NCBI GenBank assembly: GCA_002269645.1
Contig: NIVC01000172.1
Coordinates: 86,558-150,557, forward strand
DNA length: 64,000 nt
From: Macrostomum lignano
Taxonomy: Eukaryota
Direction of reading: 5' to 3'
Position numbers and translations under genes: made by a program. Numbering within the stretch: position 1 is the first letter of the stretch; each line of letters starts with the position of its first letter. Below are positions 991 through 57,952 of this stretch, in pieces. The notes under the pieces were generated by a model that worked only from the letters and a program-made list of their open reading frames with translations, was not told the DNA's origin and did not search any database.

Positions 991-1629
991 AGAGCTAGCC
1001 AATGAAGCAGGCACACATGGGTAAAACATGGAGACAAAAAATTATAATAGCAAGAGAGAGAACATTTAGAGAACTCTGACGGCATTTACTGAGTAATACT
1101 GAAGAAATCGAGCCACGAGGAGAGAGGCAGCACGAGACGAAGAAAAAGAGGCCGAGAGAGGCAAGGCAAGACACTCGCGATTGATATAGAGACTTGAAAT
1201 GTCACTCTGGACACGCGTCAAAGTTTGAAGCCCCAGTTCCAAGTTATGTTTGCCAGTCGGCTCTTTATACTAGCAGTTTAGTGGAAAATATTTCAGCACC
1301 GTCTGTTCTTCACTGAACACGCGGCACTAAAAAGCCGTGTGCATATGCGCCGTTCGGTGCGCGCACTACACGTACCAGTGATTTCTTGTCGTCTGACCTC
1401 TGTCTAATTTCCAACAGAAATCCAAGGGCGGTCCGGCGAATGAAGGACCAAATTTGCCTTCCATTTGTCAGCCTTACGGGAAAAATTAATTTTTACAATC
1501 TTCGAAAGCTGAGTGATCACATGCCAGCTGGTTTTTCATGTTGAAGTGAACGAAGACGGGAGTATAAGAAGTACATGTATGTGTACTTTTACATTTTTGG
1601 CTTGGAAGGCCGTAATATCATTTCATAAA

Positions 1630-3980: not shown

Positions 3981-4461
3981 TATCGTCTCGGCAGTAAGAT
4001 CATATCAATTCAATATGCAACTAGTTAATCTCGGCTCAGATGAAGAGGATCTGAGGCTCAACTCCGTGAGATATATTGATATCACAATGATTTTGCTTTT
4101 TTGACAGATAGTCCAGCATGGCAGACATTTTCCACTCGCTTAGCCAGTCGATTAGCAGTTTCTAATAAAGCAAGCTGGCTGTAATTTCACTCTAGGCAAG
4201 CTTCTAAAGCCTTCATTGATCGGATACTGCATGGCCGGTTTGACTGGGATGAGAGATGCGAAGTGAATTTTTCTATCGATTCCCAGAAAGCTAGAAATGG
4301 CGCTCGGGCCTGTTATCTAAGATTGTAGTTCTCTTTTGTTACAAATAATTGTAGTCATGCTATGCTAGTAAGCTGAGAAAAGATCTAAATTATAACAGCT
4401 GGTTCTTTCTCGCTTGCATTGACTGGATTTTGAGTCTGCCGACTGCGGCTGTTCCTCACTG

Positions 4462-7235
4462 ACTTTACGGATCTCCGCTCCCTCTCTCCACGGATCTCCG
4501 CTCCCTCTCTCCACGGATCTCCGCTTCCTCTCTCCACGGATCTCCGCTCCCTCTCTCCACAGATCTCCGCTTCCTCTCTCCACGGATCTCCACTTCCTCT
4601 GTCCACGGATCTCCCTTTCTCCACGGATCTCCGCTCCCTCTCTCCACGGATCTCCCTCTCTCCACGGATCTCCCTTTCTCCACGGATCTCCGCTCCCTCT
4701 CTCCATGGATCTCCGCTCCCTCTCTCCACGGATCTCCGCTCCCTCTCTCCACGGATCTCCGCTCCCTCTCTCCACGGATCTCCGCTCCCTCTCTCCACGG
4801 ATCTCCGCTCCCTCTCTCCACGGATCTCCGCTCCCTCTCTCCACGGATCTCCGCTCCCTCTCTCCACGGATCTCCGCTCCCTCTCTCCACGGATCTCCGC
4901 TCCCTCTCTCCACGGATCTCCGCTCCCTCTCTCCACGGATCTCCGCTCCCTCTCTCCACGGATCTCCGCTCCCTCTCTCCACGGATCTCCGCTCCCTCTC
5001 TCCACGGATCTCCTCTCAATCTCTTTAAGGATCTTCTCTCCCGCTCTCCACGGATCCCCTCTCCTTCTCTCCACGGATCTCCTCTCAATCTCTCCACGGA
5101 TCTCCTCTCAATCTCTCCACGGATCTCCTCTCAATCTCTCCACGGATCTCCTCTCAATCTCTCCACGGATCTCCTCTCCTTCTCTCCACGGATCTCCTCT
5201 CAATCTCTCCGCGGATCTCCTCTCAATCTCTCCACGGATCTCCTCTCAATCTCTCCACGGATCTCCTCTCCTTTCCACGGATCTCCTCTCAATCTCTCCA
5301 CGGATCTCCTCTCAATCTCTCCACGGATCTCCTCTCAATCTCTCCACGGATCTCCTCTCAATCTCTCCACGGATCTCCTCTCAATCTCTCCACGGATCTC
5401 CTCTCAATCTCTCCACGGATCTCCTCTCAATCTCTCCACGGATCTTCTCTCAATCTCTCCACGGATCTCCTCTCAATCTCTCCACGGATCTCCTCTCCCT
5501 CTCTCCACGAATCTTCTCTCAATCTCTCCACGGATCTTCTCTCAATCTCTCCACGGATCTCCTCTCAATCTCTCCACGGATCTTCTCTCAATCTCTCCAC
5601 GGGTCTCCTCTCAATCTCTCCACGGATCTCCTCTCAATCTCTCCACGGATCTCCTCTCAATCTCTCCACGGATCTCCTCTCAATCTCTCCACGGATCTCC
5701 TCTCAATCTCTCCGCGGATCTCCTCTCAATCTCTCCACGGATCTCCTCTCAATCTCTCCACGGATCTCCTCTCAATCTCTCCACGGATCTCCTCTCAATC
5801 TCTCCACGGATCTCCTCTCAATCTCTTCACGGATCTCCTCTCAATCTCTCCATGGATCTCCTCTCAATCTCTCCACGGATCTCCTCTCAATCTCTCCACG
5901 GATCTTCTCTCAATCTCTCCACGGATCTCCTCTCAATCTCTCCACGGATCTCCTCTCAATCTCTCCACGGATCTCCTCTCAATCTCTCCACGGATCTCCT
6001 CTCAATCTCTCCACGGATCTCCTCTCAATCTCTCCACGGATCTCCTCTCAATCTCTCCACGGATCTCCTCTCAATCTCTCCACGGATCTCCTCTCAATCT
6101 CTCCACGGATCTCCTCTCAATCTCTCCACGAATCTTCTCTCAATCTCTCCACGGATCTTCTCTCAATCTCTCCACGGATCTCCTCTCAATCTCTCCACGG
6201 ATCTTCTCTCAATCTCTCCACGGATCTTCTCTCAATCTCTCCACGGATCTCCTCTCAATCTCTCCACGGATCTCCTCTCAATCTCTCCACGGATCTCCTC
6301 TCAATCTCTCCACGGATCTCCTCTCAATCTCTCCGCGGATCTCCTCTCAATCTCTCCACGGATCTCCTCTCAATCTCTCCACGGATCTCCTCTCAATCTC
6401 TCCACGGATCTCCTCTCAATCTCTCCACGGATCTCCTCTCAATCTCTTCACGGATCTCCTCTCAATCTCTCCACGGATCTCCTCTCAATCTCTCCACGGA
6501 TCTCCTCTCAATCTCTCCACGGATCTTCTCTCAATCTCTCCACGGATCTCCTCTCAATCTCTCCACGGATCTCCTCTCAATCTCTCCACGGATCTCCTCT
6601 CAATCTCTCCACGGATCTCCTCTCAATCTCTCCACGGATCTCCTCTCAATCTCTCCACGGATCTCCTCTCAATCTCTCCACGGATCTCCTCTCAATCTCT
6701 CCACGGATCTCCTCTCAATCTCTCCACGGATCTCCTCTCAATCTCTCCACGGATCTCCTCTCAATCTCTCCACGGATCTTCTCTCAATCTCTCCACGGAT
6801 CTCCTCTCAATCTCTCCACGGATCTCCTCTCCCTCTCTCCACGGATCTCCACTCAATCTCTCCACGGATCTCCTCTCAATCTCTCCACGGATCTCCTCCC
6901 AATCTCTCCACGGATCTCCTCTCAATCTCTCCACGGATCTCCTCTCAATCTCTCCATGGATCTCCTCTCAATCTCTCCGCGGATCTCCTCTCAATCTCTC
7001 CACGGATCTCCTCCCAATCTCTCCACGGATCTCCTCTTCCTCTCTCCACGGATCTCCTCTCAATCTCTCCGCGGATCTCCTCTCAATCTCTCCACGGATC
7101 TCCTCTCAATCTCTCCATGGATCTTCTCTCCTCTCCACGGATCTCCTCTCAATCTCTCCATGGATCTCCTCTCAATCTCTCCACGGATCTCCACTCAATC
7201 TCTCCACGGATCTTCTCTTCTCTCTATGGATCTGC
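4462..7235. repeat. 23-bp pyrimidine-rich minisatellite, two variant domains
   Basis: CACGGATCTCCGCTCCCTCTCTC to about 5010, then CACGGATCTCCTCTCAATCTCTC. Confidence 0.97.
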
Positions 7236-8039
7236 CTCTCCGCTCCCTCTCCCAGCCCTGTCAGGAAGGGGCAATGGAATGTGTCTGTATCAATGTCCAT
7301 CTTAATCCTCCTTGATTAGCCAATTGCAAATCATGCAAATTACGTATTTTCTCTTTCACTGAAAAGATTGCTGGCGGCAAGAAGGCAACGAGGCGCCAAA
7401 GCTTGACCTATTGGGATCCAATTTTTCTTCAGGCTACCGTTGTCTGGCTAACGAAGGCATCAAGCAGGAATGGCTTTTTGGCTTTCTCTCTTCTCCTAGT
7501 GACCGCACAGCAAGAGAGACGCGGCAAAATAAATAGGCACTATAGAGTGGGGTTCGGGAGGGCCTATCGTAAATGGCATTTGAGGTGCGACAAATCCCAC
7601 AGCGACTGTGGTGTTAATTCCTTTCCTCCCTTCTCTCTCACTCTCTCCATCTCTTCCCGCACCGTCGGTGGTCTAGGAGAGGTCAAGCCAGAGCAAAGAA
7701 ATTCGGCTGCCCTAAGGACTCTCTGGTTGGGGACCAATCAAGCCCCATGCTCCACCCCCCGCTGCTCCGACTGAGGCAATCTAATTGTCGGAGATTCTGT
7801 TAGACCTCCCCTGCTCCCCTGGCCTGCCGCCCTCGGGGGCTGACGTTCTGGCATGAAAGCTTGCCAGATATTTTGTCCTGCAAGTCTCTTCATTGCTCAT
7901 GTCCCAGCTGTATGCATTGCTGAGGTTATTAGCTTAGAATTATTGCGGCAATTATGGATTTGCTTCAGGTGGGGAAGAAAAATGAGATCCGTACCTCCGT
8001 ATGGAGTAGATGGGGTTTAAATAGAGGTGGGATCATTGA

Positions 8040-14457: not shown

Positions 14458-16080
14458 TTGCGGCCCTTACCCCTGTCTCATGGTTTGCGGCCCCTACCCC
14501 TGTCTCATGGTTTGCGGCCCTTACCCCTGTCTCATGGTTTGCGGCCCCTACCCCTGTCTCATGGTTTGCGGCCCCTACCCCTGTCTCATGGTTTGCGGCC
14601 CTTACCCCTGTCTCATGGTTTGCGGCCCCTACCCCTGTCTCATGGTTTGCGGCCCTTACCCCTGTCTCATGGTTTGCGGCCCCTACCCCTGTCTCATGGT
14701 TTGCGGCCCCTACCCCTGTCTCATGGTTTGCGGCCCCTACCCCTGTCTCATGGTTTGCGGCCCCTACCCCTGTCTCATGGTTTGCGGCCCCTACCCCTGT
14801 CTCATGGTTTGCGGCCCCTACCCCTGTCTCATGGTTTGCGGCCCTTACCCCTGTCTCATGGTTTGCGGCCCCTACCCCTGTCTCGTGGTTGGCGGCCCCT
14901 ACCCCTGTCTCATGGTTTGCGGCCCTTACCCCTGTCTCATGGTTTGCGGCCCCTACCCCTGTCTCATGGTTGCCCCTACCCCTGTCTCATGGTTGCCCCT
15001 ACCCCTGTCTCATGGTTGCCCCTACCCCTGTCTCATGGTTTGCGGCCCCTACCCCTGTCTCATGGTTGCCCCTACCCCTGTCTCATGGTTGCCCCTACCC
15101 CTGTCTCATGGTTTGCGGCCCCTACCCCGTCTCATGGTTTGCGGCCCCTACCCCGTCTCATGGTTGGCGGCCCCTACCCCTGTCTCATGGTTTGCGGCCC
15201 CTACCCCTGTCTCATGGTTGGCGGCCCCTACCCCTGTCTCATGGTTGGCGGCCCCTACCCCTGTCTCATGGTTTGCGGCCCCTACCCCTGTCTCATGGTT
15301 TGCGGCCCCTACCCCGTCTCATGGTTTGCGGCCCCTACCCCCCCCCTGTCTCATGGTTGGCGGCCCCTACCCCGTCTCATGGTTTGCGGCCCCTACCCCC
15401 CCTGTCTCATGGTTTGCGGCCCCTACCCCTGTCTCATGGTTTGCGGCCCCTACCCCTGTCTCATGGTTTGCGGCCCCTACCCCTGTCTCATGGTTTGCGG
15501 CCCCTACCCCTGTCTCATGGTTGGCGGCCCCGACCCCTGTCTCATGGTTGGCGGCCCCTACCCCTGTCTCATGGTTTGCGGCCCCTACCCCTGTCTCATG
15601 GTTTGCGGCCCCTACCCCTGTCTCATGGTTTGCGGCCCCTACCCCTGTCTCATGGTTTGCGGCCCCTACCCCTGTCTCATGGTTTGCGGCCCCTACCCCT
15701 GTCTCATGGTTGGCGGCCCCGACCCCTGTCTCATGGTTGGCGGCCCCTACCCCTGTCTCATGGTTTGCGGCCCCTACCCCTGTCTCATGGTTTGCGGCCC
15801 CTACCCCTGTCTCATGGTTTGCGGCCCCTACCCCTGTCTCATGGTTGGCGGCCCCTACCCCTGTCTCATGGTTGGCGGCCCCTACCCCTGTCTCATGGTT
15901 TGCGGCCCCTACCCCTGTCTCATGGTTTGCGGCCCCTACCCCTGTCTCATGGTTTGCGGCCCCTACCCTTGTCTCATGGTTTGCGGCCCCTACCCCTGTC
16001 TCATGGTTGGCGGCCCCTACCCCTGTCTCATGGTTGGCGGCCCCTACCCCTGTCTCATGGTTGGCGGCCCCTACCCCTGT
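14458..16080. repeat. 27-bp minisatellite (about 60 copies)
   Basis: TGCGGCCCCTACCCCTGTCTCATGGTT; the three long + ORFs are 9-aa repeat artefacts. Confidence 0.97.
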
Positions 16081-16125: not shown

Positions 16126-17004
16126 GGTCCTGTCATCCGTTGAGCCTGGTTACCTCTTTCACATTTTTGGAGGAGTGTTACTTTTTACTGCGATGGGGGG
16201 CCCTTCTGCTTGCGCCACTATCTCTTTCCTGTTAAACGAGGATGGGAAGACGTGGGCAACCCGCGGATCAGCCGCAATATGTAAGGAGCTTATCTACCAG
16301 GGGCATATGGTAGACCAGGACCAGGTTGGGACCAGGACTCAAGGCCTGGTGAGAGTGCCTTATTGGATGCTACAAACCCAAGCCTATGGACTAAGACACC
16401 ACCAACCCATAGTGGAATCAGGAACGGTGCAAGGACCAAATCCACCCAAGCCACCCACCAACGACAAAACCCGAGTGTGCGCGCGAAAAAAATGGAAAAT
16501 CTCTTTTGGAAATCTCTTTCGTGGCCCCTTGTAATTAAGTAAAAAGTATTTAACAAAGTATTTTTACTACGCAAAAGTTCAACAGAACAGCGTGAAGCAG
16601 AATAGACAGAGAAGCGAACCGGTTCCGCGGGCAACAACTACCAGCCCCGGATCAATAGCCATACCGGAGCGCCGATGAAAAATCTCCCCTATAGCTAGCT
16701 ACCCAGCCCAAACCTTCACGTGACCTTAAACCGCAGCTGGGCATAGCGCCATGGCTCTAGTGAATGCTACCTTTGGGCTGCCCTCTTTCCAAAGGGAAGA
16801 ATTTGCAAAAACAAAAAAATTTGGGTGGGAAAAAACACGTTGAAGGAATGGGGGCGCATGCAGGAGATGAAGCAGGCTGTATTTGTTGGAAAGCGAAAAT
16901 TACTCTGGCTTAAGTGCAAAAACTATTTTTGGGCTTATTGCTTGGCTTAAAGATGTTGCACCAAGTTGGTGCCAAAGGGATTTGCTGATTCGAAAATTTG
17001 CAGA

Positions 17005-18115
17005 AGGCGACAGGGTTAGAGTGTCAGAAGACGGAAGGGTTAGTGTCAGAAGACGACAGGGTTAGTGTCAGAAAACGACAGGGTTAGTGTCAGAAGACGG
17101 CAGGGTTTGAGTGTCAGAAGACGGCAGGGTTTGAGTGTCAGAAGACGCCAGGGTTAGTGTCAGAAGACGGCAGGGTTAGTGTCAGAAGACGACAGGGTTA
17201 GTGTCAGAAGACGGCAGGGTTAGAGTGTCAGAAGACGACAGAGTTAGAGTGTCAGAAGACGACAGGGTTAGTGTCAGAAGACGGAAGGGTTAGTGTCAGA
17301 AGACGACAGGGTTAGAGTGTCAGAAGACGACAGGGTTAGTGTCAGAAGACGACAGGGTTAGTGTCAGAAGACGGCAGGGTTAAAGTTAGAAGACGGCAGG
17401 GTTAGAGTGTCAGAAGACAACAGGGTTAGAGTGTCAGAAGACGACAGAGTTAGAGTGTCAGAAGACGACAGAGTTAGTGTCAGAAGACGACAGGGTTAGT
17501 GTCAGAAGACGGCACGGCATGCAGGGTTTGAGTGTCAGAAGACGACAGAGTTAGTGTCAGAAGACGACAGGGTTAGTGTCAGAAGACGGCACGGCATGCA
17601 GGGTTTGAGTGTCAGAAGACGGCAGGGTTTGAGTGCCAGAAGACAGCAGGGTTTGAGTGTCAGAAGACGACAGGGTTAGTGTCAGAAGACGGCAGGGTTT
17701 GAGTGTCAGAAGACAGCAGGGTTTGAGTGTCAGAAGACGGCAGGGTTAGTGTCAGAAGACGGCACGGCATGCAGGGTTTGAGTGTCAGAAGACGGCAGGG
17801 TTAGTGTCAGAAGACGACAGAGTTAGAGTGTCAGAAGACGACAGAGTTAGTGTCAGAAGACGACAGAGTTAGAGTGTCAGAAGACGACAGAGTTAGTGTC
17901 AGAAGACGACAGGGTTAGTGTCAGAAGACGGCACGGCATGCAGGGTTTGAGTGTCAGAAGACGGCAGGGTTTGAGTGCCAGAAGACAGCAGGGTTTGAGT
18001 GTCAGAAGACGACAGGGTTAGTGTCAGAAGACGGCAGGGTTTGAGTGTCAGAAGACAGTAGGGTTTGAGTGTCAGAAGACGGCAGGGTTTGAGTGTCAGA
18101 AGACGGCAGGGTTTG
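17005..18115. repeat. 22-24-bp minisatellite
   Basis: GTGTCAGAAGACGACAGGGTTA(GA) variants. Confidence 0.95.
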
Positions 18116-18299
18116 ATTGCAAGATGCTGCAAAGTTTGGTTTTGGAAGGTAAAGAAGTTAGTGACAGAAATACTTCCGTTGGTATTGTATTCGCAGCGGT
18201 GCATGGTTACAAGCAATGGACGATTAAAATTATCTCTTTAACTAGCGGTCAAAAACATTCCAGTGTCAATTAAAGTTTTCAGCGGTGTAAAAGTTGATG

Positions 18300-19374: not shown

Positions 19375-19810
19375 ATCGCCTCTCCCTCCAGGCCTCACCC
19401 TCTCCCTCCAGGCCTAACCCTCTCCCTCCAGGCCTCACCCTCTCCCTCCAGGCCTCACCCTCTCCCTCCAGGTCCACCCTCTTTCTCCAAGTCTCAACCT
19501 CTCCATCCAGGTCTCCCCTCTCCCTCCAGGTCTCACCCTCACCCTTCAAGTCTCGCCCTCTTCCTCCAGGTCCATCCTCTCTCTCCAGGTCTCTCACCCT
19601 CTCCCTTCAGGTCTCCCCTCTCCCTCCAGGTCTCGCCCTCTCCCTCCAGGTCTCCCCTCTCCCTCCAGGTCCACCCTCTCTCTCCAGGTCTCACCCTCTC
19701 CCTCTCCTTCCAGGTCTCCCCTCTCCCTCTCCTTCCAGGTCTCCCCTCTCCCTCCAGGTCTCACCCTCACCCTTCAAGTCTCGCCCTCTCCCTCCAGGTC
19801 TGACCCTCTG
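19375..19810. repeat. CT-rich, about 20-bp intronic repeat
   Basis: CTCTCCCTCCAGGTCTCACC variants. Confidence 0.9.
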
Positions 19811-19906
19811 CCTCCACTTCCGATCTCTTCCTCCATTTCAATATCCAATCCTGTTCCTCACAATAAGCATTTAAATCACCCCGAATCTGAAACTGGAACC
19901 CCGCAG

Positions 19907-24069: not shown

Positions 24070-24312
24070 TCACATTGACATGGGCTTGAAACTGACATCG
24101 CATTTTTTGCAATGCAGAGTCGGACTATCCGGCGAGATGCAGCAGCCGCCCAGTTTCACTCGACCGGCCTCGGCGCTGGCCATCAGTTCCGAGCTGGGCC
24201 GGCCATAGACTATGGGCACGATCACCGAGCTATCGGCGTTCAACTGATGGCCACATTGTGGACACGCTTCATCGCTTTCTGCAGATTGCTGCTGCCGCTT
24301 TTGTTCGCTCAT
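24070..24312 (-). CDS. Intronless 80-aa Cys-rich putative metal-binding protein (paralog 1)
   Basis: CPQC...IVPIVYGRP..ELM..A..G.VKLGGCC....PTLHCKKC; core motif conserved with paralog 2 despite substantial divergence. Confidence 0.85.
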   Translation of the reverse strand: MSEQKRQQQSAESDEACPQCGHQLNADSSVIVPIVYGRPSSELMASAEAGRVKLGGCCISPDSPTLHCKKCDVSFKPMSM

Positions 24313-24386
24313 TCGTACTTGTGAACTCCCTGAAAATTGGTCCAGGACGGCAATAATAAACTAATGTACATGAAGACACTTATAAA

Positions 24387-25252
24387 CAGCGGGTCTCAAG
24401 GGCTGTTTGGGAGCGGGTCTCAACGGCTGTTTGGGAGCGGGTCTCAATGGCTGTTTGGGAGCGGGTCTCAACGGCTGTTTGGGAGCGGGTCTCAACGGCT
24501 GTTTGGGAGCGGGTCTCAATGGCTGTTTGGGAGCGGGTCTCAAGGGCTGTTTGGGAGCGAGTCTCAACGGCTGTTTGGGAGCGGGTCTCAACGGCTGTTT
24601 GGGAGCGGGTCTCAACTGCTGTTTGGGAGCGAGTCTCAACGGCTGTTTGGGAGCGGGTCTCAAGGGTTGTTTGGGAGCGAGTCTCAACGGCTGTTTGGGA
24701 GCGGGTCTCAACGGCTGTTTGGGAGCGGGTCTCAACGGCTGTTTGGGAGCGGGTCTCAACGGCTGTTTGGGAGCGGGTCTCAACGGCTGTTTGGGAGCGG
24801 GTCTCAAGGGTTGTTTGGGAGCGAGTCTCAACGGCTGTTTGGGAGCGGGTCTCAACGGCTGTTTGGGAGCGGGTCTCAACGGCTGTTTGGGAGCGGGTCT
24901 CAACGGCTGTTTGGGAGCGGGTCTCAAGGCCTGTTTGGGAGCGAGTCTCAACGGCTGTTTGGGAGCGGGTCTCAAGGGTTGTTTGGGAGCGAGTCTCAAC
25001 GGCTGTTTGGGAGCGGGTCTCAAGGGTTGTTTGGGAGCGAGTCTCAACGGCTGTTTGGGAGCGGGTCTCAAGGGTTGTTTGGGAGCGAGTCTCAACGGCT
25101 GTTTGGGAGCGGGTCTCAAGGGTTGTTTGGGAGCGAGTCTCAACGGCTGTTTGGGAGCGGGTCTCAACGGCTGTTTGGGAGCGGGTCTCAAGGGTTGTTT
25201 GGGAGTGGGTCTCAGGGCTGTTTGGGAGCGATAAAAAGGCCGGGCTGTTTGG
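24387..25252. repeat. 24-bp minisatellite (about 36 copies)
   Basis: GGGAGCGGGTCTCAACGGCTGTTT. Confidence 0.97.
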
Positions 25253-25792
25253 GAGACAAGTTTAGACCGTATATGAATGTTTTAAAGCGATTCCTAAAGA
25301 GTTATTTAACGTTTTCAGAGAGCTCAGAAAAAGGATATCAAGTTAATTTGAAACGCGTGAGAGAATAAACTCTTTATCAAATCCAATTTTAATATCAAAA
25401 TAGACTTATTTGAAGTATCACAGATTTATAATTAAACACAAAGCAAAAAATGTTAAAAAGAAGCACAAAGGCAAAAACGAATATTAAAAAAAATCATGTA
25501 CAGGTAGATACGCTTATGTCCAATAAAAATTCAAAAGTACACGAATATCCTAAAAGTTTGAGAGCTTTGGTTTTTGTATATCCTCAATGAAAAGAGTTAA
25601 ATTTTAAAAAACATATAAGTTACTAAGAGTAGCGTAAAATGTTTCAAAGAATTATGCTCCTAATTCCACGGAAAAACGAAATTGTTCCATAAATTCATTC
25701 TCTTACTGGCTGTGATGCTTGATCGATATTGGAGTCAAACAGTATAAAAATTGAACTGTACTTCGGCATGAGTGGATTTTTTCCCCAAAATG

Positions 25793-26002
25793 TTACGGAC
25801 GAAAATCGAATTTGCACGCTTCGCAGTGCTTGGTTGGACAATTGGGCGATACGCAACAGCCGCCCAGTTTCACAGCGCCAGACTTGGCCTTCTCCATCAG
25901 TTGGTGGTTTGGTTTGCCATAGACTATGGACACCACGTGTTCTGAGCTGTTGCAGTTGGGACAGGAGGAACTCTTCTGCTTGTCTGGCTGCTTCTGATCC
26001 AT
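25793..26002 (-). CDS. Intronless 69-aa Cys-rich putative metal-binding protein (paralog 2)
   Basis: CPNC...VVSIVYGKP..QLM..A..G.VKLGGCC....PTKHCEAC; start MDQKQ chosen by alignment with paralog 1 (an upstream ATG at 26062 is in frame). Confidence 0.85.
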   Translation of the reverse strand: MDQKQPDKQKSSSCPNCNSSEHVVSIVYGKPNHQLMEKAKSGAVKLGGCCVSPNCPTKHCEACKFDFRP

Positions 26003-26693
26003 GATGATGCTATGAACCAGAGCTGGGGCTGCAACTGTTGGATTAACCCGAACCAATTGCATTGACGACTGACAACATGATGCTATTTTTAGAATTACGT
26101 CAGTTTCTATATTTAAATCGGAAGTTAAATTCCCTTAGTTTGGAAATGGAAATCAGATTTCCTGATTAAGATGCATGCACAGTATAACAGATTTCCACTT
26201 TACTATATTAAGTTTACATATAAGTTTATACTTGCTAATGAATTCAAATAGTTATTTATAGTTTGTTACGGATTAAAAAAACAAAGGCAAAGGCGACCAT
26301 AAAATTTAGCGATGGATGGACAGATTACCGTAGACTTTATTAGAGCGAATAAATATATTGCCGCTGGATAGAAAACTTCATTTGAAACAAGAAGAAAGGT
26401 TTTTCTCACACTTCTATCATAGGGGAAGCTGCTAAATAAATTATCTGAATTAATGAGCAATTCAATAACATTTTCAGAAACTGATATACACGTGTCATCT
26501 GTATAATACGAATACTGCAAAATTAAAAAAATCGATATAAAATATGATAATTAGCAGAGCTAAAGCACTAGAGCAGAAAAACCGTTAGCAATTGGAAAAA
26601 GTTATGGCAAAATTCATGGAAATTCCATGGAAAATCCTGAAAACTTGACAAACAATGGTCAAGAAAGTTCAATTTTTCAACCCCGGAAAAAGT

Positions 26694-27357
26694 TCAAGCC
26701 TCCTCGGTGACGCCCATCACGTGCCGATTAAACCACAGCACGATGTCGACAAACACGCTGCTCTGAACTGGGACGCTGCTCATCGGATGGCAATCGTCAG
26801 GACACACCAGCAGCCTAGTTGGCACATTCCTCGCTCGCAGAGCCCGGTACAGCTCCCGACCCTGCTGCGGCGGCACCCGGAGATCCTTGAGTCCCACAGC
26901 GACCAGCGTCGGCGTGTTGACTTTGGACGCGTGCGACAGCGGAGACTTGGACCACAGCAGGGCCAGGGTCTCCGCGTCCAGCAGGCGGTCGTGGCTGAAT
27001 GGCAGGCCGCTCTGCTCGTAAACCCAGTCGGGAATGTCGCTTCCGCCGACCATGGTGGCCAGGTTGATCACCGGGTTGCGCAGCACGGCGGCTTTGAACA
27101 TGCCGGGCCGCTGGCCAATCAGGTGGCCCCCGAGAAAGCCGCCGTGCGAGCCGCCAAACGCGGCGAGTTTCTCACCATCAAGACGAGGCAGCGCGGAGTT
27201 ATCAGCGGACGAAGCCGACTCGGCCAGCGTCTCCTCCACTGCCTGAATGCAGTCGGACACGTCGCGCTCGCCAATGCCGCCGAGCAGGGAGTCGACGGTC
27301 GATTTGCCGAATCCGAGCGAGCCGCGGTAGTTGATCATCAGGACAGCGTAGCCGCAC
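26694..27357 (-). CDS. APEH: Acylamino-acid-releasing enzyme (S9C peptidase), exon 4
   Basis: INYRGSLGFG, catalytic GGSHGG, NPVIN, GLKDLRVP (Asp), DDCH (His); phase-2 acceptor CTCAACCAG. Confidence 0.95.
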
Positions 27358-27404
27358 CTGGTTGAGGTAAGTATGCAGACTTGGGGAAACTCGCTCACCC
27401 GCTA

Positions 27405-28328
27405 CCCATCTCACTCCCCGCCCGACACTCACCTCACTCCCTGCCCCGACACCCACCTCACTGCCTGCCCCGACACCCACCTCATTCCCTGCCCCGACAC
27501 CCACCTAACTCCCTGCCCCGACACCCACCTCACTCCCTGCCCCGACACCCACCTCACTGCCTGCCCCGACACCCACCTCACTGCCTGGCCCAACACCCAG
27601 CTCACTGCCTGCCCCGACAACCACTCACTCCTTGCCCAGACACCCACCTCACTCCCTGCCCCGACACCCACCTAACTCCCTGCCCCGACACCCACCTCAC
27701 TCCCTGCTCCGACACCCACCTAACTCCCTGGCCCGACACCCACCTCACTGCCTGGCCCGACACCCACCTAACTCCCTGCCCCGACACCCACCTAACTCCC
27801 TGCCCCGACACCCACCTCACTCCCTGCCCCGACACCCACCTCACTGCCTGCCCCGACACCCACCTCACTCCCTGCCCCGACACCCACCTAACTCCCTGCC
27901 CCGACACCCACCTAACTCCCTGCCCCGACACCCACCTAACTCCCTGCCCCGACACCCACCTAACTCCCTGCCCCGACACCCACCTCACTCCCTGCCCCGA
28001 CACCCACCTCACTGCCTGGCCCGACACCCACCTCACTCCCTGCCCCGACACCCACCTAACTCCCTGCCCCGACACCCACCTCACTCCCTGCCCCGACACC
28101 CACCTCACTGCCTGGCCCGACACCCACCTAACTCCCTGCCCCGACACCCACCTCACTCCCTGCCCCGACACCCACCTCACTCCCTGCCCCGACACCCACC
28201 TCACTCCCTGCCCCGACACCCACCTCACTGCCTGCCCCGACACCCACCTCACTGCCTGGCCCAACACCCACCTCACTGCCTGGCCCGACACCCACCTCAC
28301 TGCCTGCCCCGACACCCACCTCACTCCC
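27405..28328. repeat. 24-bp intronic minisatellite
   Basis: CCCCGACACCCACCTCACTCCCTG variants. Confidence 0.97.
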
Positions 28329-28357
28329 AGCTAACACAAAACAAATCTATAGTGCAC

Positions 28358-28932
28358 CTGGCTAGTCCGCAGACGTAGCGCATATAAGTAGCGGTAAACG
28401 ATGTGTTAGGTCCGCCGTGCGGAAACGCGATCAACGGAAGCGGCAGCTCAGTGATTGCTGCCGGCTTCTCTTCGTCTCCCTTTTTGCTATCCTTCTTCTT
28501 AGACGAGTCAACTGGCCACACCAGAATCGATTCGAACAATTGATTCCCGAATTCGGGATGGGCCAATTTCGCCGTGTGCTGCTTCACCCGCCAGGCGATG
28601 TCGTTCAGCTTGAAGCAATCGGTCAGACAGGTCCACTTAATGTTTGAAGTCAGCGGCTTGCTTGCGTCAATGAATCCAGCAGCGATAAATGGCGGCACGT
28701 TTGGCGCGCTGGCCTCAACAACCAGCCAGTCGCGATGAAAGTCCAAGACTTTAGCGCTGCTCGCATCTGGCGGTAGCGACAGCAGCTCGCCGATCTTGGT
28801 CTTGACGTCAATCGCCAGCAGGCAATCTTTGCTCCGATTGATGCTGCTAAGAACGACGGTGCGACAGTTGGAGGACCAGCAGCGAGACGGCAGGCTGTCG
28901 GCGTAAATTCCTGGAAAGCCTGCGCTGCCAGC
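28358..28932 (-). CDS. APEH: APEH exon 3
   Basis: FPGIY...LPSRCWS...[10 protein letters not shown]; phase-0 acceptor CCCTACGCAG, phase-2 donor AG|GTGCAC. Confidence 0.92.
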
Positions 28933-28989
28933 CTGCGTAGGGAGGAATGGCGAGTCTGATTGCAGACAGAAACTGGCTTTGAGAGCCTG

Positions 28990-29760
28990 AGGCTGGGCAC
29001 TGATTACAGATGAGACTGAGCCACTGATTACAGCTGAGACTGAGGCACTGACTACAGCCTGAGACTGAGGCACTGATTACAGATGAGACTGAGGCACTGA
29101 TTACAGCTGAGACTGAGGCACTGATTACAGATGAGACTGAGGCACTGATTACAGCTGAGACTGAGGCACTGATTACAGCTGAGACTGAGGCACTGATTAC
29201 AGATGAGACTGAGGCACTGATTACAGCTGAGACTGAGGCACTGATTACAGCTGAGACTGAGGCACTGATTACAGCCTGAGACTAAGAGGTCTGATTACAG
29301 TCTGAGACTAAGGGGTCTGATTACAGTCTGAGACTAAGGGGTCTGATTACAGTCTGAGACTAAGGGGTCTGATTACAGTCTGAGACTAAGAGGTCTGATT
29401 ACAGTCTGAGACTAAGGGGTCTGATTACAGTCTGAGACTAAGGGGTCTGATTACAGTCTGAGACTAAGGGGTCTGATTACAGTCTGAGACTAAGGGGTCT
29501 GATTACAGTCTGAGACTAAGGGGTCTGATTACAGTCTGAGACTGAGGGTCTGATTACAGCCCGAGACTGAGGGTCTGATTACAGCCTGAGACTGAGGCAC
29601 TGACTACAGCCTGAGACTAAGGGGTCTGATTACAGTCTGAGACTAAGAGGTCTGACTACAGTCTGAGACTGGGGGTCTCATTACAGCCTGAGACTGGGGC
29701 TCTGATTACAGCCTGAGACTGGGGCTCTGATTACAGCCGGAGACTGGGGGTCTGATTACA
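28990..29760. repeat. 24/26-bp intronic minisatellite
   Basis: GAGACTGAGGCACTGATTACAGCT grading into GAGACTAAGGGGTCTGATTACAGTCT. Confidence 0.95.
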
Positions 29761-29789
29761 ACCCTAACACCCACCCCGCGATTACGCAC

Positions 29790-30261
29790 CTGATTAACAA
29801 AATCGATAATGAACCGTATATCCTTCGTGGCCCAATCGCACCAGATGAGCCGTCTGCACTGTTTATGCGGACCTGATGGCTCATTCTGCAGCCACACCAG
29901 CTGGGTCTGGCACGGGCTGAACCTGGGCGATGACACGGCTCGAGTATCGTGACCAATCACCGCGCACTCTCCGCTGCGAAAGTCCAGATAGTAAATAGCG
30001 GACGGCCTCTGATTGCAATAGATTACACCCAGCTGATAGGGCAGCTCTTTGTAGCCAACAAAGACTACGCCAGCATCGTCAGGAGCCCAGCAAGGTTCCG
30101 TTGGCAGCACGCCGTCGAGTATGCCGCCATCGTCAAGCACGGTGACGACCTCGGAGTCAACATCGAGAGTGCACAGCACTGGTCGCTTGTACTCGGATAG
30201 TTGCTCGCCAAAGTGTTCCACGCTATCATACTGCTTGCCAACTGATTTGGCCTCGCCAGGT
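29790..30261 (-). CDS. APEH: APEH exon 2
   Basis: EHFGEQL...PVLCTLD...WAPDD.GVVF...LGVIYCNQRPSAIY...SSPRFSP...GPHKQC; phase-2 acceptor TTTTCACAG, phase-0 donor CAG|GTGCGT. Confidence 0.92.
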
Positions 30262-30337
30262 CTGTGAAAATATCAGACAGACAAAAACAATAGTAGATAT
30301 TTTACAAGCCCAAATTCAGGACTCTAGAAATGTAAGT

Positions 30338-30507
30338 TAATAATGATGATTAATTGACTGCACCTGCCCAAATTGGGCTAGATGTGCAACCGACAGCTCA
30401 GCCGCAGCTATTGCGCGGCGCATCTGAATGCTGCGTACGGCTGTTCAGTCCAAGGACTGGGGGGTCGCCACACGCACCCTCAATTACCCCAGCTAATGCT
30501 GGCACCC
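30338..30507 (-). mobile_element. SINE family 1, 3' fragment in APEH intron 1
   Basis: Near-identical to 21465-21615. Confidence 0.85.
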
Positions 30508-30763
30508 AGCAGAGCAAATCCCAGGTTCGATACCTAATTTATATTTATCTGGCTCTCGTGCACAAAAATTCATTTGGGGCTTCCGCAATTCTCGCCACCA
30601 AGGGTCAACCCGAGCCATTAGGCACCCAGTGTACACTGTCTGTGCCTAACGATCAGAAACTGAGCGTGTGCCTGATTACTCATCCGTGCAAGTGTTCAGT
30701 GGTCAGTTGAAGGTGCATGATGACTGCTTTAATCGCTACAGAATGTAAAAAACAACAACTTAC

Positions 30764-31386
30764 TTTCCGGCGCTCTCTTCGCTAAACGTATCAGCGGCAA
30801 AGTAAGACGCATTCTTTGGCTGTTTCTTTTCGGCAACGTACAGCAGATGTCCCTCATTGTAGGACCACTGGCACGCGCCCAGCTCGGGACCGTACACCGC
30901 CCCGTGCTTGGCTTTCTCGCTCAGATCGATGCTCTTAATAAAACGGGACTCATTGTAGACGTGGACTATGAATTTATCGGCATTGTCACTGCCGGACCCT
31001 TCAGCTTTGAGCTTGAGCAGCACGGCCCGATGGTCGCCCACGCTGCAGTAGACATCCCACAGTGTGGTCGGATCCCGCAGTACAGGATCCGAGTCAACCA
31101 GATCTCCAGTTGGCAGTACAACGGCAGTTTTCACCAGCGTGCGATTCTTTTGACTAGCCAAATCTTGCACCTGATAGGCGCACCGAGTTCTGATGGCGTC
31201 GCTGAATGGATACTGAGGCAACAGCTGGGCAGACTGCGGCACTGGATAGGCGGCCAGGTCAGAATAGACCTGAGCCACCTCCTTGGCTGACTTCACAGAT
31301 GACGGCTTCATCATCAAGCTGAGTGATTGCGAACCTGCGACTTCTGCTTTTTGCGAGGCGAATAGAAGGGAAGAAAATCTGAGCAT
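30764..31386 (-). CDS. APEH: APEH exon 1 (start codon uncertain: 31386 or the downstream MMKP)
   Basis: KHGAVY...GACQWSYNEGHLLYVAEKKQPK matches the APEH N-terminal propeller; donor AA|GTAAGT, phase 2. Confidence 0.9.
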
Positions 31387-31474
31387 GAAAATTATAATTA
31401 GCTGTTTTGCTAGTTGAGACTAAATCAAGGGTAGGATAAAAGAGGAAAAAACACCTCTAAGGAGCAGGTTATAA

Positions 31475-32152
31475 CTAGATCCACTGATGAAGAGGGGGAT
31501 TATAACTAGATCCACTGATGAAGAGGGGGATTATAACTAAATCCACTGATGGGGAGGGGATTATAACTAGATCCACTGATGGGGAGGGGATTATAACTAA
31601 ATCCACTGATGGGGAGGGGATTATAACTAGATCCACTGATGGGGAGGGGATTATAACTAGATCCACTGATGAAGAGGGGGATTATAACTAAATCCACTGA
31701 TGGGGAGGGGATTATAACTAGATCCACTGATGGGGAGGGGATTATAACTAAATCCACTAAGAAGGGGATTATAACTAAATCCACTGATGGGGAGGGGATT
31801 ATAACTAAATCCACTGATGAGATGGGGATTATAACTAAATCCACTAATAAGGGGATTATAACTAAATCCACTGATAAGGGGATTATAACTAAATCCACTA
31901 ATCAGGGGATTATAACTAAATCCACTGATAAGGGGATTATAACTAAATCCACTGATAAGGGGATTATAACTAAATCCACTGATAAGGGGATTATAACTAA
32001 ATCCACTGATAAGGGGATTGTAACTAAATCCACTAATAAGGGGATTATAACTAAATCCAATGATGGGAGGGAATTATAACTAAATCCACTGATAAGGGAA
32101 TTATAACTAAATCCAATGATGGGAGGGGATTATAACTAAATCCACTGATAAG
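31475..32152. repeat. 30/24-bp minisatellite upstream of APEH
   Basis: GGATTATAACTAAATCCACTGAT(GGGGAG/AAG)G. Confidence 0.95.
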
Positions 32153-34645: not shown

Positions 34646-35326
34646 CTAACGATGTCGTTGCCGTTGACTGCAGTTAGTCGGACCTGGCTGTTTCAGCATG
34701 CTGCGAAATCTTTTATGATTCGCACGCAACAGATTTGGATATTTTGAAGGTCCCAGTTGCCTGCGTGGATCGAACCTTCGTTGATGCTTTTTTTGACCGC
34801 AGTGCTTCAATGTTGCTAGCAGAAATTTTTTAGCAAGAATCGGGCCTAGCCGCTCATGTGGCTGTGCATCAGATAGAGACGGCAGCAATTCTTGAGCGAC
34901 GATTGGCCCTGGCAGCAATTCTTGAGCGACGATTGGCCCTGGCAGCAATTCTTGAGCGACGATTGGCCCTGGCAGCAATTCTTGAGCGACGATTGGCCCT
35001 GGCAGCAATTCTTGAGCGACGATTGGCCCTGGCAGCAATTCTTGAGCGACGATTGGCCCTGGCAGCAATTCTTGAGCGACGATTGGCCCTGGCAGCTCAA
35101 AAGGCGCCTGTACATCGGGTAGTTGTTGCTCAGACACAGCATCCGAGGTTTCTGTTGAAAAGGGCAGCCAGAGTTCAAATGGGTACAGCCAATCGTTCTC
35201 AGACACAGCATCCGAGGCTTCTGTAGACAAGGATAGCCAGGGTTCCTGTAGCCATGGGTACAAAAGCGGGTCTTCCTCCGACTCCAACAATATTGGAGGA
35301 TCTTCATCAGCAGGCTGGTCGGCCAT
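34646..35326 (-). CDS. Hypothetical 226-aa protein with 7x LPGPIVAQEL repeat
   Basis: Open frame extends beyond the repeat on both sides; strong acceptor CTTTTCTTTTCAG 2 nt before the ATG; acidic N-terminus, basic C-terminus; no recognisable domain. Confidence 0.4.
   Translation of the reverse strand: MADQPADEDPPILLESEEDPLLYPWLQEPWLSLSTEASDAVSENDWLYPFELWLPFSTETSDAVSEQQLPDVQAPFELPGPIVAQELLPGPIVAQELLPGPIVAQELLPGPIVAQELLPGPIVAQELLPGPIVAQELLPGPIVAQELLPSLSDAQPHERLGPILAKKFLLATLKHCGQKKHQRRFDPRRQLGPSKYPNLLRANHKRFRSMLKQPGPTNCSQRQRHR
34880..35095. repeat. Perfect 30-bp tandem repeat x7
   Basis: GGCAGCAATTCTTGAGCGACGATTGGCCCT. Confidence 0.97.
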
Positions 35327-57897: not shown

Positions 57898-57952
57898 TAA
57901 TTTTTTTTGTCTTGGCGTTAAAAAGCTTTAATTAAAAAAACTCTACTCTCTA

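What the first reader, a model, noticed from the sequence alone, without database searches (positions are those of the whole stretch)
24070..26062. Tandem pair of intronless Cys-rich microproteins with a prokaryote-like signature (HGT candidate)
Seen: two 69-80-aa paralogs share CPxC...(V/I)VxIVYGxP..xLM..A..GxVKLGGCCxSPxxPTxHCxxC while other positions have diverged, which implies an old duplication under selection. Both are intronless and sit between intron-containing animal genes around a host-type minisatellite, so they are integrated rather than contaminant. From recall, not a search: this CPxC/YGxP/LGGC/CxxC pattern characterises uncharacterised small bacterial and archaeal proteins, and I know no animal family with it. 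Inference: horizontally acquired, duplicated metal-binding or redox proteins (two CxxC knuckles plus vicinal CC and His), a possible undescribed metal-handling or detox module.
Basis: partly seen in the sequence, partly recalled or inferred. Interest (0 to 1): 0.8.

Follow-up and report, generated by a model that had tools for sequence, protein, structure and literature searches.

The report
Bacterial-type zinc-ribbon gene pair in flatworm
Two neighbouring small genes in the flatworm Macrostomum lignano encode a five-cysteine, probably zinc-binding domain that is otherwise found almost only in bacteria and has never been described, so they are good candidates for bacterial genes captured and duplicated by an animal; what they do is unknown.

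Summary
Two intronless ORFs, A (24070-24312, 80 aa) and B (25793-26002, 69 aa), are paralogs (BLASTP E 7e-21) flanking a 24-bp minisatellite. The window is Macrostomum lignano contig NIVC01000172.1. The order APEH-B-A recurs on three contigs that differ by 2-4%, so the genes are integrated, not contamination. An exhaustive HMMER search found 2,542 cluster representatives. Every organism-named relative apart from the flatworm and a rotifer is bacterial. No Pfam, NCBIfam, PHROG or PADLOC model covers the family. AlphaFold models are confident (pLDDT 84 and 86) and have no PDB neighbour. The signature is CPxC...IVYGxP...LGGC...CxxC, with five near-invariant cysteines. Other eukaryotic carriers exist: a bdelloid rotifer, a protist-like contig and a marine transcript. 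The tree is unresolved, so the number and direction of transfers remain open. Both RNA-seq-derived gene models start right after a CAG acceptor on the APEH strand, which fits an SL-trans-spliced operon. Function is unknown. My best guess is a zinc-stabilised binding module. There is no evidence for a detox role.

The parts
24070..24312 (-). Gene A CDS, 80 aa, intronless. Annotated in the sister locus as BOX15_Mlig009883g3. Five-Cys zinc-ribbon-like domain at residues 17-75.
   Evidence: ORF. Identical protein in L001-L003. Self hit P0001. AF2 pLDDT 84.3.
24330..24335 (-). TTTCAG splice acceptor, 15 nt upstream of the ATG of A. The annotated gene model starts directly after it. Putative SL trans-splice site.
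   Evidence: Sequence. The product P0001 starts 'SSQVG' two nt after the CAG. The published M. lignano SL acceptor motif is [T/C]TNCAG (PMC8629364).
24388..25230. 24-bp minisatellite, 35 units, in the B-A intergenic spacer. It has 34-35 units in this contig (34 by the count, 35.2 by TRF), 41 and 2 units in the other two copies of the locus.
   Evidence: TRF. Unit counts.
25793..26002 (-). Gene B CDS, 69 aa, intronless paralog of A. The ORF is open up to the ATG at 26062, but that ATG lies upstream of the acceptor.
   Evidence: Product P0002. AF2 pLDDT 86.2.
26035..26037 (-). CAG acceptor directly before the 5' end of the B gene model, 32 nt upstream of the ATG at 26002.
   Evidence: P0002 begins 'AAPALV' two nt after this CAG.
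26694..31380 (-). Host APEH gene (acylamino-acid-releasing enzyme; APEH_N + Peptidase_S9), multi-exon, immediately upstream on the same strand. Possible first gene of a three-gene transcription unit.
   Evidence: Gene calls with Pfam. Coordinates mapped through L003, which is 100% identical to window 15793-36032.

Best explanation
A and B are two real genes integrated in the Macrostomum lignano genome. They descend from one bacterial-type gene that entered a eukaryotic lineage by horizontal transfer and was then duplicated in tandem.

Each gene encodes a cytoplasmic protein of about 55 structured residues. In that structure two cysteine knuckles (CPxC near the start, CxxC near the end) most likely hold one zinc ion, as in a zinc ribbon. 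About 30 inserted residues (strand, helix, strand, carrying YGxP and LGGC with a fifth invariant cysteine) form the family-specific surface.

The most likely role is a small zinc-stabilised binding module for a protein or nucleic-acid partner, not an enzyme or metal store.

In the worm the two CDSs are probably expressed as downstream cistrons of a spliced-leader trans-spliced transcription unit headed by APEH. That would give a promoterless foreign ORF host-type expression.

Shown: the paralogy, the integration, the bacterial-dominated family, the signature, the confident fold and the acceptor sites at the gene-model starts. Inferred: the direction of transfer, zinc binding, the binding function and operon expression.
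For: Integration:
- The window is NIVC01000172.1.
- The order APEH-B-A recurs on NIVC01000920.1 and NIVC01002273.1 at 96-98% identity, with different minisatellite lengths.

Family:
- A profile built from A+B finds 2,542 representatives at E<1e-3 and 116 at E<1e-10.
- Named members are Dictyoglomus, Actinomadura, Spirillospora, Clostridium, Planctomycetes and others.
- All 37 GTDB loci are Bacteria from at least 6 phyla.
- No curated model exists.

Duplication in the lineage:
- The tail CxxCxxxF[KR]P occurs only in A, B and one marine eukaryotic transcript out of 383 members.
- GGCC[IV]SPxxPTxHC occurs only in A and B.
- A versus B gives dN 0.37 and dS 0.83.

Fold and metal:
- Cysteine columns are conserved at 99, 99, 99, 100 and 93%. 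The last one is replaced by D or H in about 4% of members, as expected of a metal ligand.
- AF2 gives pLDDT 84.3 and 86.2 with the same beta-alpha-beta-beta-beta order.
- Weak matches put both knuckles on the zinc ribbons of L37Ae and the RNA polymerase II chain 1qyp (E 0.14-0.3). 37 of 117 members hit Pfam Zn_ribbon_8 at E <= 0.01; the best (3.4e-05) and the hits checked one by one lie below the gathering score.

Binding-module idea:
- Fusions are promiscuous: OmpA, CarboxypepD_reg, UDG, DUF6794/WYL, a DUF6438-like domain, and tandem self-duplication.
- Neighbours are not conserved.

Expression:
- The annotation is built only from RNA-seq, and transcripts were cut at experimentally mapped SL sites (PMC5730564).
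- Both models start right after a CAG, which for A lies in TTTCAG, the published SL motif.
- APEH-to-B is about 660 nt and B-to-A about 600 nt without the repeat. Both are on the same strand and below the published 1-kb operon threshold.

Constraint:
- A shows 2 synonymous and 0 nonsynonymous differences between copies.
Against: - The NJ tree on 56 columns does not recover A+B or any eukaryote clade. A is as similar to the best bacterial members (54-56%) as to B (50%).
- Three of the first ten hits whose source I looked up are eukaryotic. An older eukaryotic subfamily or eukaryote-to-eukaryote spread is therefore possible.
- No close donor was found. The best metagenome identity is 54%.
- B has 6 nonsynonymous and 0 synonymous differences between copies. 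This is compatible with relaxed constraint.
- No RNA-seq reads, SL reads or peptides were examined here. Gene identifiers were not found in the supplements of two papers.
- Zinc-ligand geometry could not be measured because model coordinates are not exposed.
- About 7% of members have signal-peptide-like N-termini, where cysteines would be oxidised rather than bind zinc.
Confidence: 0.6

Rival explanations
1. The family is old in eukaryotes. It was either acquired once deep in eukaryote history or is ancestral. Macrostomum inherited it vertically, with loss in most other lineages. The flatworm genes are then not a lineage-specific HGT.
For: Members occur in at least three or four unrelated eukaryotic sources:
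- the bdelloid rotifer Didymodactylos carnosus;
- a contig carrying Med10 and P4-ATPase flippases;
- a marine eukaryotic metatranscriptome sequence.
These rank 4th, 6th and 14th among 2,542 hits of the A+B profile. The marine transcript alone shares the F[KR]P tail with A and B.
Against: No other organism-named animal, fungal or plant protein appeared among the rows listed. The eukaryotic sequences are only 44-56% identical to each other and do not cluster in bootstrapped NJ trees. Bdelloid rotifers are known to carry many foreign genes (general knowledge). The bacterial distribution spans many phyla.
Confidence: 0.13
2. The proteins are redox-active or metal-handling/detoxifying. This is the first reader's idea: CxxC motifs act as thiol-disulfide switches or as a chaperone for Zn, Fe, Cd or As.
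For: There are five invariant cysteines, two of them in CxxC motifs. An extra vicinal cysteine is present in cytoplasmic forms, including A and B. One source names an Actinomadura member 'Rubrerythrin', and two of 117 members give weak rubrerythrin-like NCBIfam hits.
Against: - There is no thioredoxin fold. The CxxC motifs sit in ribbon knuckles, not at a helix N-terminus. Foldseek hits to Trx-like domains are insignificant (E>2).
- Cysteine content is 7 of 80 residues, and the folded hydrophobic core is unlike metallothionein.
- Bacterial loci show no conserved metal-resistance, arsenic or redox neighbours.
- The vicinal CC and the His are not conserved.
Confidence: 0.12
3. One or both ORFs are decaying relics of a transfer. 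They are transcribed as passengers of the APEH unit but make no functional protein. B is the more likely case.
For: B differs between locus copies by 6 nonsynonymous and 0 synonymous changes, a rate (2.9%) close to the flank divergence of about 4%. No proteomic or phenotypic evidence was found.
Against: - Both ORFs are intact in all three locus copies, with every signature residue kept.
- All six changes in B fall at positions that vary across the family.
- A has 0 nonsynonymous changes.
- A versus B gives dN/dS of about 0.45 over a long divergence.
- Both fold confidently.
Confidence: 0.1
4. A and B were acquired independently from two different donors and lie side by side by chance or through a shared insertion hotspot.
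For: In the 56-column core A and B are no closer to each other (50%) than to many bacterial members. NJ does not join them.
Against: They are adjacent and in the same orientation. Two sequence motifs are unique to the pair among 383 members. Synonymous divergence is not saturated (pS 0.50).
Confidence: 0.04
5. The ORFs are bacterial contamination or a chimeric assembly.
For: The CDSs are intronless and their homologs are bacterial.
Against: - Three separate contigs of 83-749 kb carry the same host-gene order, with allelic or homeolog-level divergence and different minisatellite lengths.
- The flanks are AT-rich host sequence carrying the genome's typical minisatellites.
- Splice acceptors lie at the gene-model starts.
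Confidence: 0.01

Closest known systems
Classical zinc ribbons (ribosomal protein eL43/L37Ae, the RNA polymerase II chain 1qyp, Pfam Zn_ribbon_8/FmdB, YjdM/PhnA ribbon)
   Same: An N-terminal CPxC knuckle and a C-terminal CxxC knuckle are each flanked by short strands. Weak alignments place both knuckles on those of L37Ae and 1qyp. 37 of 117 family members hit Zn_ribbon_8 at E <= 0.01 and 18 of 117 hit Zn_Ribbon_YjdM.
   Different: The knuckles are about 47 residues apart, against about 15 in the classical ribbons. The insert is a conserved strand-helix-strand carrying IVYGxP and LGGC with a fifth invariant cysteine. In every match checked one by one the Pfam or NCBIfam score lies below the curated cut-off, and the best E-values in the family-wide scans are 2e-06 (Pfam) and 1.9e-06 (NCBIfam). 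There is no Foldseek match to any PDB chain (best E 0.84 and 2.0).
Bacterial-origin genes in animal genomes, as documented in bdelloid rotifers and some nematodes and arthropods (general knowledge)
   Same: An intronless bacterial-type CDS is embedded among intron-containing host genes, has a host-type splice acceptor upstream, and was duplicated after arrival. The same family is present in the bdelloid D. carnosus, next to a microbial-type PARG.
   Different: The host is a free-living flatworm. None of the ten papers listed out of 19 that mention both M. lignano and horizontal gene transfer has both terms in its title, and none of their titles concerns gene transfer into M. lignano. The product is a tiny domain of unknown function, not a metabolic enzyme. 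No donor clade can be named.
SL trans-spliced operons of M. lignano (PMC8629364), and the proposal that SL trans-splicing helps transferred genes become expressed (Paulinella, PMC6053224)
   Same: The genes share a strand and lie less than 1 kb apart once the repeat is removed. A CAG acceptor sits at each downstream gene start, and for A it is TTTCAG, which matches [T/C]TNCAG.
   Different: SL-containing reads were not inspected here, so trans-splicing and co-transcription with APEH are inferred. B's acceptor (CAACAG) matches only the CAG core.
Uncultured Caudovirales phage protein A0A6J5TE54 (BFVD)
   Same: It is the only significant structural neighbour (Foldseek E 4.7e-5, TM 0.62, 26% identity over 65 columns). 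It is probably a member of the same family.
   Different: It is itself uncharacterised. The family is rare in mobile elements: one phage hit among 50,697 phage records, two among 72,556 plasmid records, and none in IMG/VR with the strict pattern.

Membership tests
Unnamed bacterial CPxC-IVYGxP-LGGC-CxxC small-protein family (no curated model) | Significant profile or sequence similarity to many independent members | tested here: met
   The A+B profile finds 2,542 representatives at E<1e-3 and 116 at E<1e-10. In the reverse direction, a 117-member profile scores the flatworm protein P0001 at E 1.6e-20.
Unnamed bacterial CPxC-IVYGxP-LGGC-CxxC small-protein family (no curated model) | Five near-invariant cysteines plus Y-G-x-P and L-G-G-C | tested here: met
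   Column frequencies over 378 domains: Cys 0.99, 0.99, 0.99, 1.00, 0.93; Y 0.97; G 1.00; P 0.99; LGG 0.93, 0.99, 1.00. A and B carry all of them.
Zinc-ribbon superfamily | Two CxxC-type knuckles at the turns of beta-hairpins | tested here: met
   CPxC and CxxC are present. The AF2 models place strands or bridges on both sides of each knuckle.
Zinc-ribbon superfamily | Score above threshold against a curated zinc-ribbon model, or a significant structural match | tested here: not met
   For A the best hits are Pfam Zn_ribbon_8 at 15.1 bits (cut-off 34.4) and NCBIfam YnfU at 17.9 bits (cut-off 36). The best PDB profile hit has E 0.14. The best Foldseek PDB hits have E 0.84 and 2.0.
Zinc-ribbon superfamily | Binds one Zn(II) through four Cys/His ligands | not testable with these tools
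   Model coordinates are not exposed and no metal assay is possible. Indirect support: the last Cys column is replaced by D or H in about 4% of members.
Horizontally acquired gene in an animal genome | Physically linked to bona fide host genes, not contamination | tested here: met
   The order APEH-B-A, with the LIM gene beyond A, is found on two contigs; on the third (NIVC01002273.1) an LTR retrotransposon lies where LIM lies. The three contigs diverge by 2-4%.
Horizontally acquired gene in an animal genome | Homologs concentrated in the donor domain and absent from the recipient's relatives | tested here: inconclusive
   Named homologs are bacterial, apart from a rotifer and two unidentified eukaryotes. 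Genomes of other flatworms could not be searched with these tools.
Horizontally acquired gene in an animal genome | Phylogeny nests the animal genes inside a donor clade with support | tested here: inconclusive
   NJ with 100 bootstraps on 56 columns and 378 sequences gives a star-like tree. No grouping of A, B or the eukaryotes was recovered. A+MERC fell within a clade of at most five sequences in 14% of replicates.
Horizontally acquired gene in an animal genome | Transcribed and processed by the host | tested here: inconclusive
   The gene models come from an annotation built only from RNA-seq (PMC5730564) and start right after CAG acceptors. Reads themselves were not examined. The exact 80-aa product is not on record in assembled runs.
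Thioredoxin-like CxxC oxidoreductases | Thioredoxin fold with CxxC at the N-terminus of a helix | tested here: not met
   Both models have the order beta-alpha-beta-beta-beta, with both CxxC motifs in loops or knuckles. Trx-like Foldseek hits have E>2.
Metallothionein-type metal stores | Very high Cys content (about 15-30%) in CxC/CC clusters, and no folded hydrophobic core without metal | tested here: not met
   A has 7 Cys in 80 residues (9%). It also has a conserved hydrophobic strand IVPIVY and a helix.
Immunity proteins of polymorphic toxin systems, or components of defence systems | Recurrent adjacency to a toxin or effector gene, or a match to Imm or PADLOC models | tested here: not met
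   No neighbour family recurs across the bacterial loci clustered or among the 73 flanking proteins from 19 of them scanned with Pfam, apart from one mobile subfamily. There are no PADLOC hits for the domain and no Pfam Imm hits. Some loci do lie in variable regions with SUFU, Macro, McrBC or GmrSD genes.

The most novel reading that the evidence does not exclude
This is an undescribed five-cysteine metal-binding domain. It has thousands of bacterial members, no curated model and no neighbour among solved structures. Animals that use spliced-leader trans-splicing (a flatworm and a bdelloid rotifer) have captured it more than once. In Macrostomum it became expressed by landing downstream of a host gene in an SL operon, then duplicated, and the two copies are now diverging (A constrained, B fast-evolving). 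On this reading, SL operons act as landing pads that let promoterless bacterial ORFs function in animals, and the domain has a selectable cytoplasmic role in both bacteria and animals.
Probability: 0.3. Interest if true: 0.7.

Novelty: new variant of a known kind. Interest (0 to 1): 0.5.

Why it matters
If the transfer is confirmed, this is a clean case of a bacterial gene becoming a duplicated, expressed animal gene in a transgenic, RNAi-amenable flatworm model. Knock-down, tagging and pull-down experiments are practical in that animal.

It also flags a large bacterial small-protein family (about 2,500 clusters at 50% identity) that has escaped curation and has no solved structural relative. 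Studying the two worm genes could therefore give the first functional handle on the whole family.

The gene layout downstream of APEH offers a testable example of how a promoterless foreign ORF may gain expression through spliced-leader trans-splicing.

Tried and rejected
- Curated libraries gave nothing above threshold: Pfam, NCBIfam, PHROGs and PADLOC.
- A sequence search of the PDB gave only weak zinc-ribbon hits. Foldseek against the PDB gave nothing for either model.
- The word-indexed search with A alone returned only A itself. Distant members appeared only with the exhaustive profile search.
- Conserved-neighbour analysis found no recurrent partner, so an operon-based functional inference was dropped. 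I used 39 bacterial loci for clustering and 73 flanking proteins for Pfam. A Peptidase_S9 neighbour in two bacterial loci looked intriguing because APEH is also an S9 peptidase, but BLASTP showed no relation. I treat it as coincidence.
- The immunity-protein idea came from the SUFU, DUF4253 and Macro neighbours. It was not upheld across loci.
- NJ phylogeny with bootstraps was uninformative.
- Searches for a vector or donor gave nothing closer than 54% identity: one weak phage hit, two plasmid hits, no IMG/VR hit, and the metagenome scan.
- Expression tables: the gene identifier was absent from the full-text library and from the supplements of two M. lignano papers. The exact 80-aa product is not on record in assembled runs.
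- Cluster look-ups failed to name the organism behind the protist-like contig L047.
Full report
**Observation.**
Two ORFs lie on the minus strand at the stated coordinates. A is 24070..24312 (80 aa). B is 25793..26062 as an 89-aa ORF, or 69 aa from the ATG at 26002. BLASTP aligns them at 55% identity over 47 residues, E 7e-21. The global alignment shows the described pattern CPxC...IVYGxP..LM..A..G.VKLGGCC.SP..PT.HC..C. tblastn finds no further copy in the window. Between the two genes lies a 24-bp minisatellite of 35 units (24388-25230). It is one of at least 14 such arrays in the window.

**Where the window comes from, and integration.**
The only word-indexed database hit for A is 'hypothetical protein BOX15_Mlig009883g3, partial [Macrostomum lignano]'. 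Locus L003 from contig NIVC01000172.1 of assembly GCA_002269645.1 is 100% identical to window 15793-36032.

Two further contigs, NIVC01000920.1 (L001) and NIVC01002273.1 (L002), carry the same order on one strand: APEH (APEH_N + Peptidase_S9, multi-exon), then B, then A. In two of the three contigs an intron-containing LIM gene follows on the other strand. These copies are 96-98% identical to the window. They have 2, 34 and 41 minisatellite units between B and A. That pattern fits the known redundancy of this assembly: 180 Mb lies in duplicated blocks that are at least 95% identical (PMC5730564). The ORFs have 52-56% GC, while their flanks have 30-37% GC. Contamination or a chimeric assembly is therefore very unlikely.

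**The family.**
No Pfam or NCBIfam model reaches its cut-off on A or B. An exhaustive HMMER search with a profile of A+B against 1.84 billion cluster representatives gave 2,542 proteins at E<1e-3 and 116 at E<1e-10. Most are 60-100 aa.

Two further word-indexed searches with alignments were run. In them, and in the cluster look-ups, every relative that carries an organism name is bacterial, apart from Macrostomum and a rotifer. The names include Dictyoglomus, Thermodesulfobacteriota, Actinomadura, Spirillospora, Clostridium, Thermoanaerobaculia, Cloacimonetes and a planctomycete.

A scan of one genome per GTDB species with the strict pattern GxVKLGGC[CVM][VI] gave 37 loci. All are Bacteria: Bacillota, Bacteroidota, Chlamydiota, Chloroflexota, Alphaproteobacteria and Desulfobulbia. 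No archaeal record appeared in that restricted scan.

Scanning 117 members individually gave only weak generic zinc-ribbon matches in Pfam and NCBIfam, four marginal PHROG matches, and nothing in PADLOC for the ten members scanned. The family is large, bacterial-dominated and uncurated.

**Signature and fold.**
Over 378 non-identical domains the near-invariant positions are as follows:
- C-P-x-C (0.99, 0.94, 0.99);
- I-x-Y-G-x-P (0.96, 0.97, 1.00, 0.99);
- G (0.93);
- L-G-G-C (0.93, 0.99, 1.00, 0.99);
- P (0.91);
- C-x-x-C (1.00, 0.93).

The last cysteine is replaced by D or H in about 4% of members, as expected of a metal ligand.

The second cysteine of the vicinal pair is present in only 51% of members, and the histidine before the last knuckle in 40%. 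The fifth conserved cysteine is the one in LGGC. The vicinal cysteine is depleted in members with signal-peptide-like N-termini: 2 of 21 against 157 of 282 (Fisher p 4e-5). A and B have the pair and lack a signal peptide, so they are of the cytoplasmic type.

AlphaFold2 with a 117-sequence alignment gives mean pLDDT 84.3 for A and 86.2 for B, with the core above 90. Both have the same order of elements: knuckle, strand, helix, strand, strand, knuckle, strand. Foldseek finds no PDB neighbour (best E 0.84 and 2.0). Its one significant BFVD match is an uncharacterised phage protein that is probably a family member (E 4.7e-5, TM 0.62). A profile search of PDB sequences places the two knuckles on those of the zinc ribbons of L37Ae and the RNA polymerase II chain 1qyp, but at E 0.14-0.3. 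My reading is a zinc ribbon whose knuckles are separated by a conserved insert of about 30 residues. Zinc binding itself is inferred, not shown.

**Context and fusions in bacteria.**
Gene neighbourhoods were clustered for 39 bacterial loci, and 73 flanking proteins from 19 of them were scanned with Pfam. They share no recurrent partner.

The one exception is a 190-aa Bacillota subfamily, made of this domain plus a DUF6438-like C-terminus. It is nearly identical across many genera and lies beside PRiA4_ORF3 and serine-recombinase-like genes, so it rides a mobile element.

The domain is fused to unrelated modules: OmpA, CarboxypepD_reg, UDG, DUF6794/WYL, and a second copy of itself. It also occurs behind signal peptides. 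This promiscuity, together with the absence of operon partners, fits a self-contained binding or adaptor module better than an enzyme or a dedicated pathway component. This is the weakest part of the argument. I put it at about 35-40%.

**Eukaryotic members and the HGT question.**
The family is not unique to Macrostomum among eukaryotes.
- P0005 and P0153 come from the bdelloid rotifer Didymodactylos carnosus. There a single-exon CDS is preceded directly by a polypyrimidine tract and an AG acceptor. It lies on a 10.7-kb contig with intron-containing gene models and a microbial-type PARG.
- P0015 lies on a 23-kb, 59%-GC metagenome contig between a Mediator Med10 gene, two P4-ATPase flippases and a protein kinase. 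That content points to a compact microbial eukaryote.
- P0007 is from a marine eukaryotic metatranscriptome.

These three rank 4th, 6th and 14th among the hits of the A+B profile.

A neighbour-joining analysis of 56 columns and 378 sequences with 100 bootstraps is star-like. A and B are 50% identical in the core, no closer than A is to the best bacterial members (54-56%). No eukaryotic grouping is supported. The metagenome scan found nothing above 54% identity, so no donor can be named.

Two rare shared characters do link the pair. The tail CxxCxxxF[KR]P occurs only in A, B and the marine transcript among 383 members. GGCC[IV]SPxxPTxHC occurs only in A and B. Combined with tandem position and unsaturated synonymous divergence (pS 0.50, dS 0.83, dN 0.37), this favours one arrival followed by duplication.

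A bacterial origin for the family is well supported by distribution. A transfer specific to the flatworm lineage is likely but not demonstrated, because other flatworm genomes could not be searched.

**Expression architecture.**
The Mlig_3_7 annotation was built solely from RNA-seq. Transcripts were cut at experimentally mapped SL trans-splice and poly(A) sites (PMC5730564). Both gene models are 'partial' and begin two nucleotides after a CAG:
- for A, ccaatTTTCAG|gg AGT..., with the CAG at window 24332-24330;
- for B, aatccaaCAG|tt GCA..., with the CAG at 26037-26035.

TTTCAG matches the published M. lignano SL acceptor motif [T/C]TNCAG (PMC8629364). The upstream ATG of the 89-aa ORF of B lies before its acceptor, so the 69-aa product is the likely one.

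APEH, B and A share a strand. The spacers are about 660 nt and about 600 nt once the repeat is removed, or directly in L001. Both are under the 1-kb threshold that the same paper uses to call operons. I therefore infer that B and A are downstream cistrons of an SL-resolved unit headed by APEH. A role of SL trans-splicing in making transferred genes expressible has been proposed for Paulinella (PMC6053224). I did not inspect reads, so this remains inference (about 50%).

**Selection.**
Between the locus copies, A shows 2 synonymous and 0 nonsynonymous differences. B shows 0 synonymous and 6 nonsynonymous. All six fall at positions that vary across the family. The numbers are too small for a test. 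My own estimate from the site counts is that 0 of 6 synonymous has a probability of about 0.26 under neutrality. The pattern suggests A is constrained and B is evolving faster. Both ORFs are intact in all copies.

**Comparison with known systems, and verdict.**
The proteins work most like zinc ribbons but fail the membership tests that could be run: curated thresholds and structural match. They are not thioredoxin-like, not metallothionein-like, and not recognisable immunity or defence components.

As a phenomenon they resemble the bacterial-origin genes of bdelloid rotifers. The new elements are the flatworm host, the uncurated family with its unmatched fold, and the apparent operon-based expression.

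I rate this a new variant of a known kind, with interest 0.5. It is a solid, testable HGT candidate in a tractable model animal. The function is unknown and the phylogeny unresolved.

Noticed in passing
window 99-994, 3212-3982, 4467-7240, 14458-16080, 17001-18116, 19379-19816, 27404-28328, 29000-29760, 31469-32149, 50662-55273, 57121-57905, 58310-60581: The window is unusually dense in minisatellites with 20-48-bp units, at least 14 arrays. The largest are a 4.6-kb array of a 23-bp unit (about 202 copies) with a related array 2 kb away, and a 2.8-kb array of 121 copies. These arrays produce many long spurious ORFs.
   Followed up: partly
window 24388-25230; L001 9880-9935; L002 and L003 B-A spacers: The minisatellite between B and A has 34, 41 and only 2 units in the three copies of the locus. 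It has expanded or contracted since the copies diverged.
   Followed up: yes
L002 17836-20240: In contig NIVC01002273.1 an LTR-retrotransposon polyprotein (RVT_1, RNase H, integrase; 1,921 aa) lies where the LIM gene lies in the other two copies of the locus.
   Followed up: no
L014-L025, L028, L030, L038 around 4980-6200: A 190-aa Bacillota protein (this domain plus a DUF6438-like C-terminus) is nearly identical across many genera and one Chloroflexota MAG. It is followed by a PRiA4_ORF3-family gene and lies near serine-recombinase-like genes. This looks like a recently spreading mobile element.
   Followed up: partly
family-wide (383 proteins): The second cysteine of the GGCC pair is strongly depleted in members with signal-peptide-like N-termini (2 of 21 against 157 of 282, p 4e-5). 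The cytoplasmic and exported forms may use their cysteines differently.
   Followed up: partly
L049 3157-4912 and 9929-10147; L048 666-884: In the rotifer Didymodactylos carnosus the homolog is a single-exon CDS directly preceded by a polypyrimidine tract and an AG acceptor. Its neighbour is a microbial-type poly(ADP-ribose) glycohydrolase (PARG_cat_microb), which may be another foreign gene.
   Followed up: partly
L047 10001-10306: A family member lies on a 59%-GC, apparently intron-poor metagenome contig between Med10, two P4-ATPase flippases, a kinase and a dihydropyrimidine-dehydrogenase-like gene. That content points to an unidentified microbial eukaryote. Its taxon could not be determined.
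   Followed up: partly
window 25793-26002 versus L001 9193-9402: Gene B differs between locus copies by six nonsynonymous and no synonymous substitutions. Gene A differs by two synonymous substitutions only.
   Followed up: partly
window 34646-35326 (-): A 206-aa gene with no Pfam match is called upstream of APEH on the same strand in L003. It was not examined.
   Followed up: no
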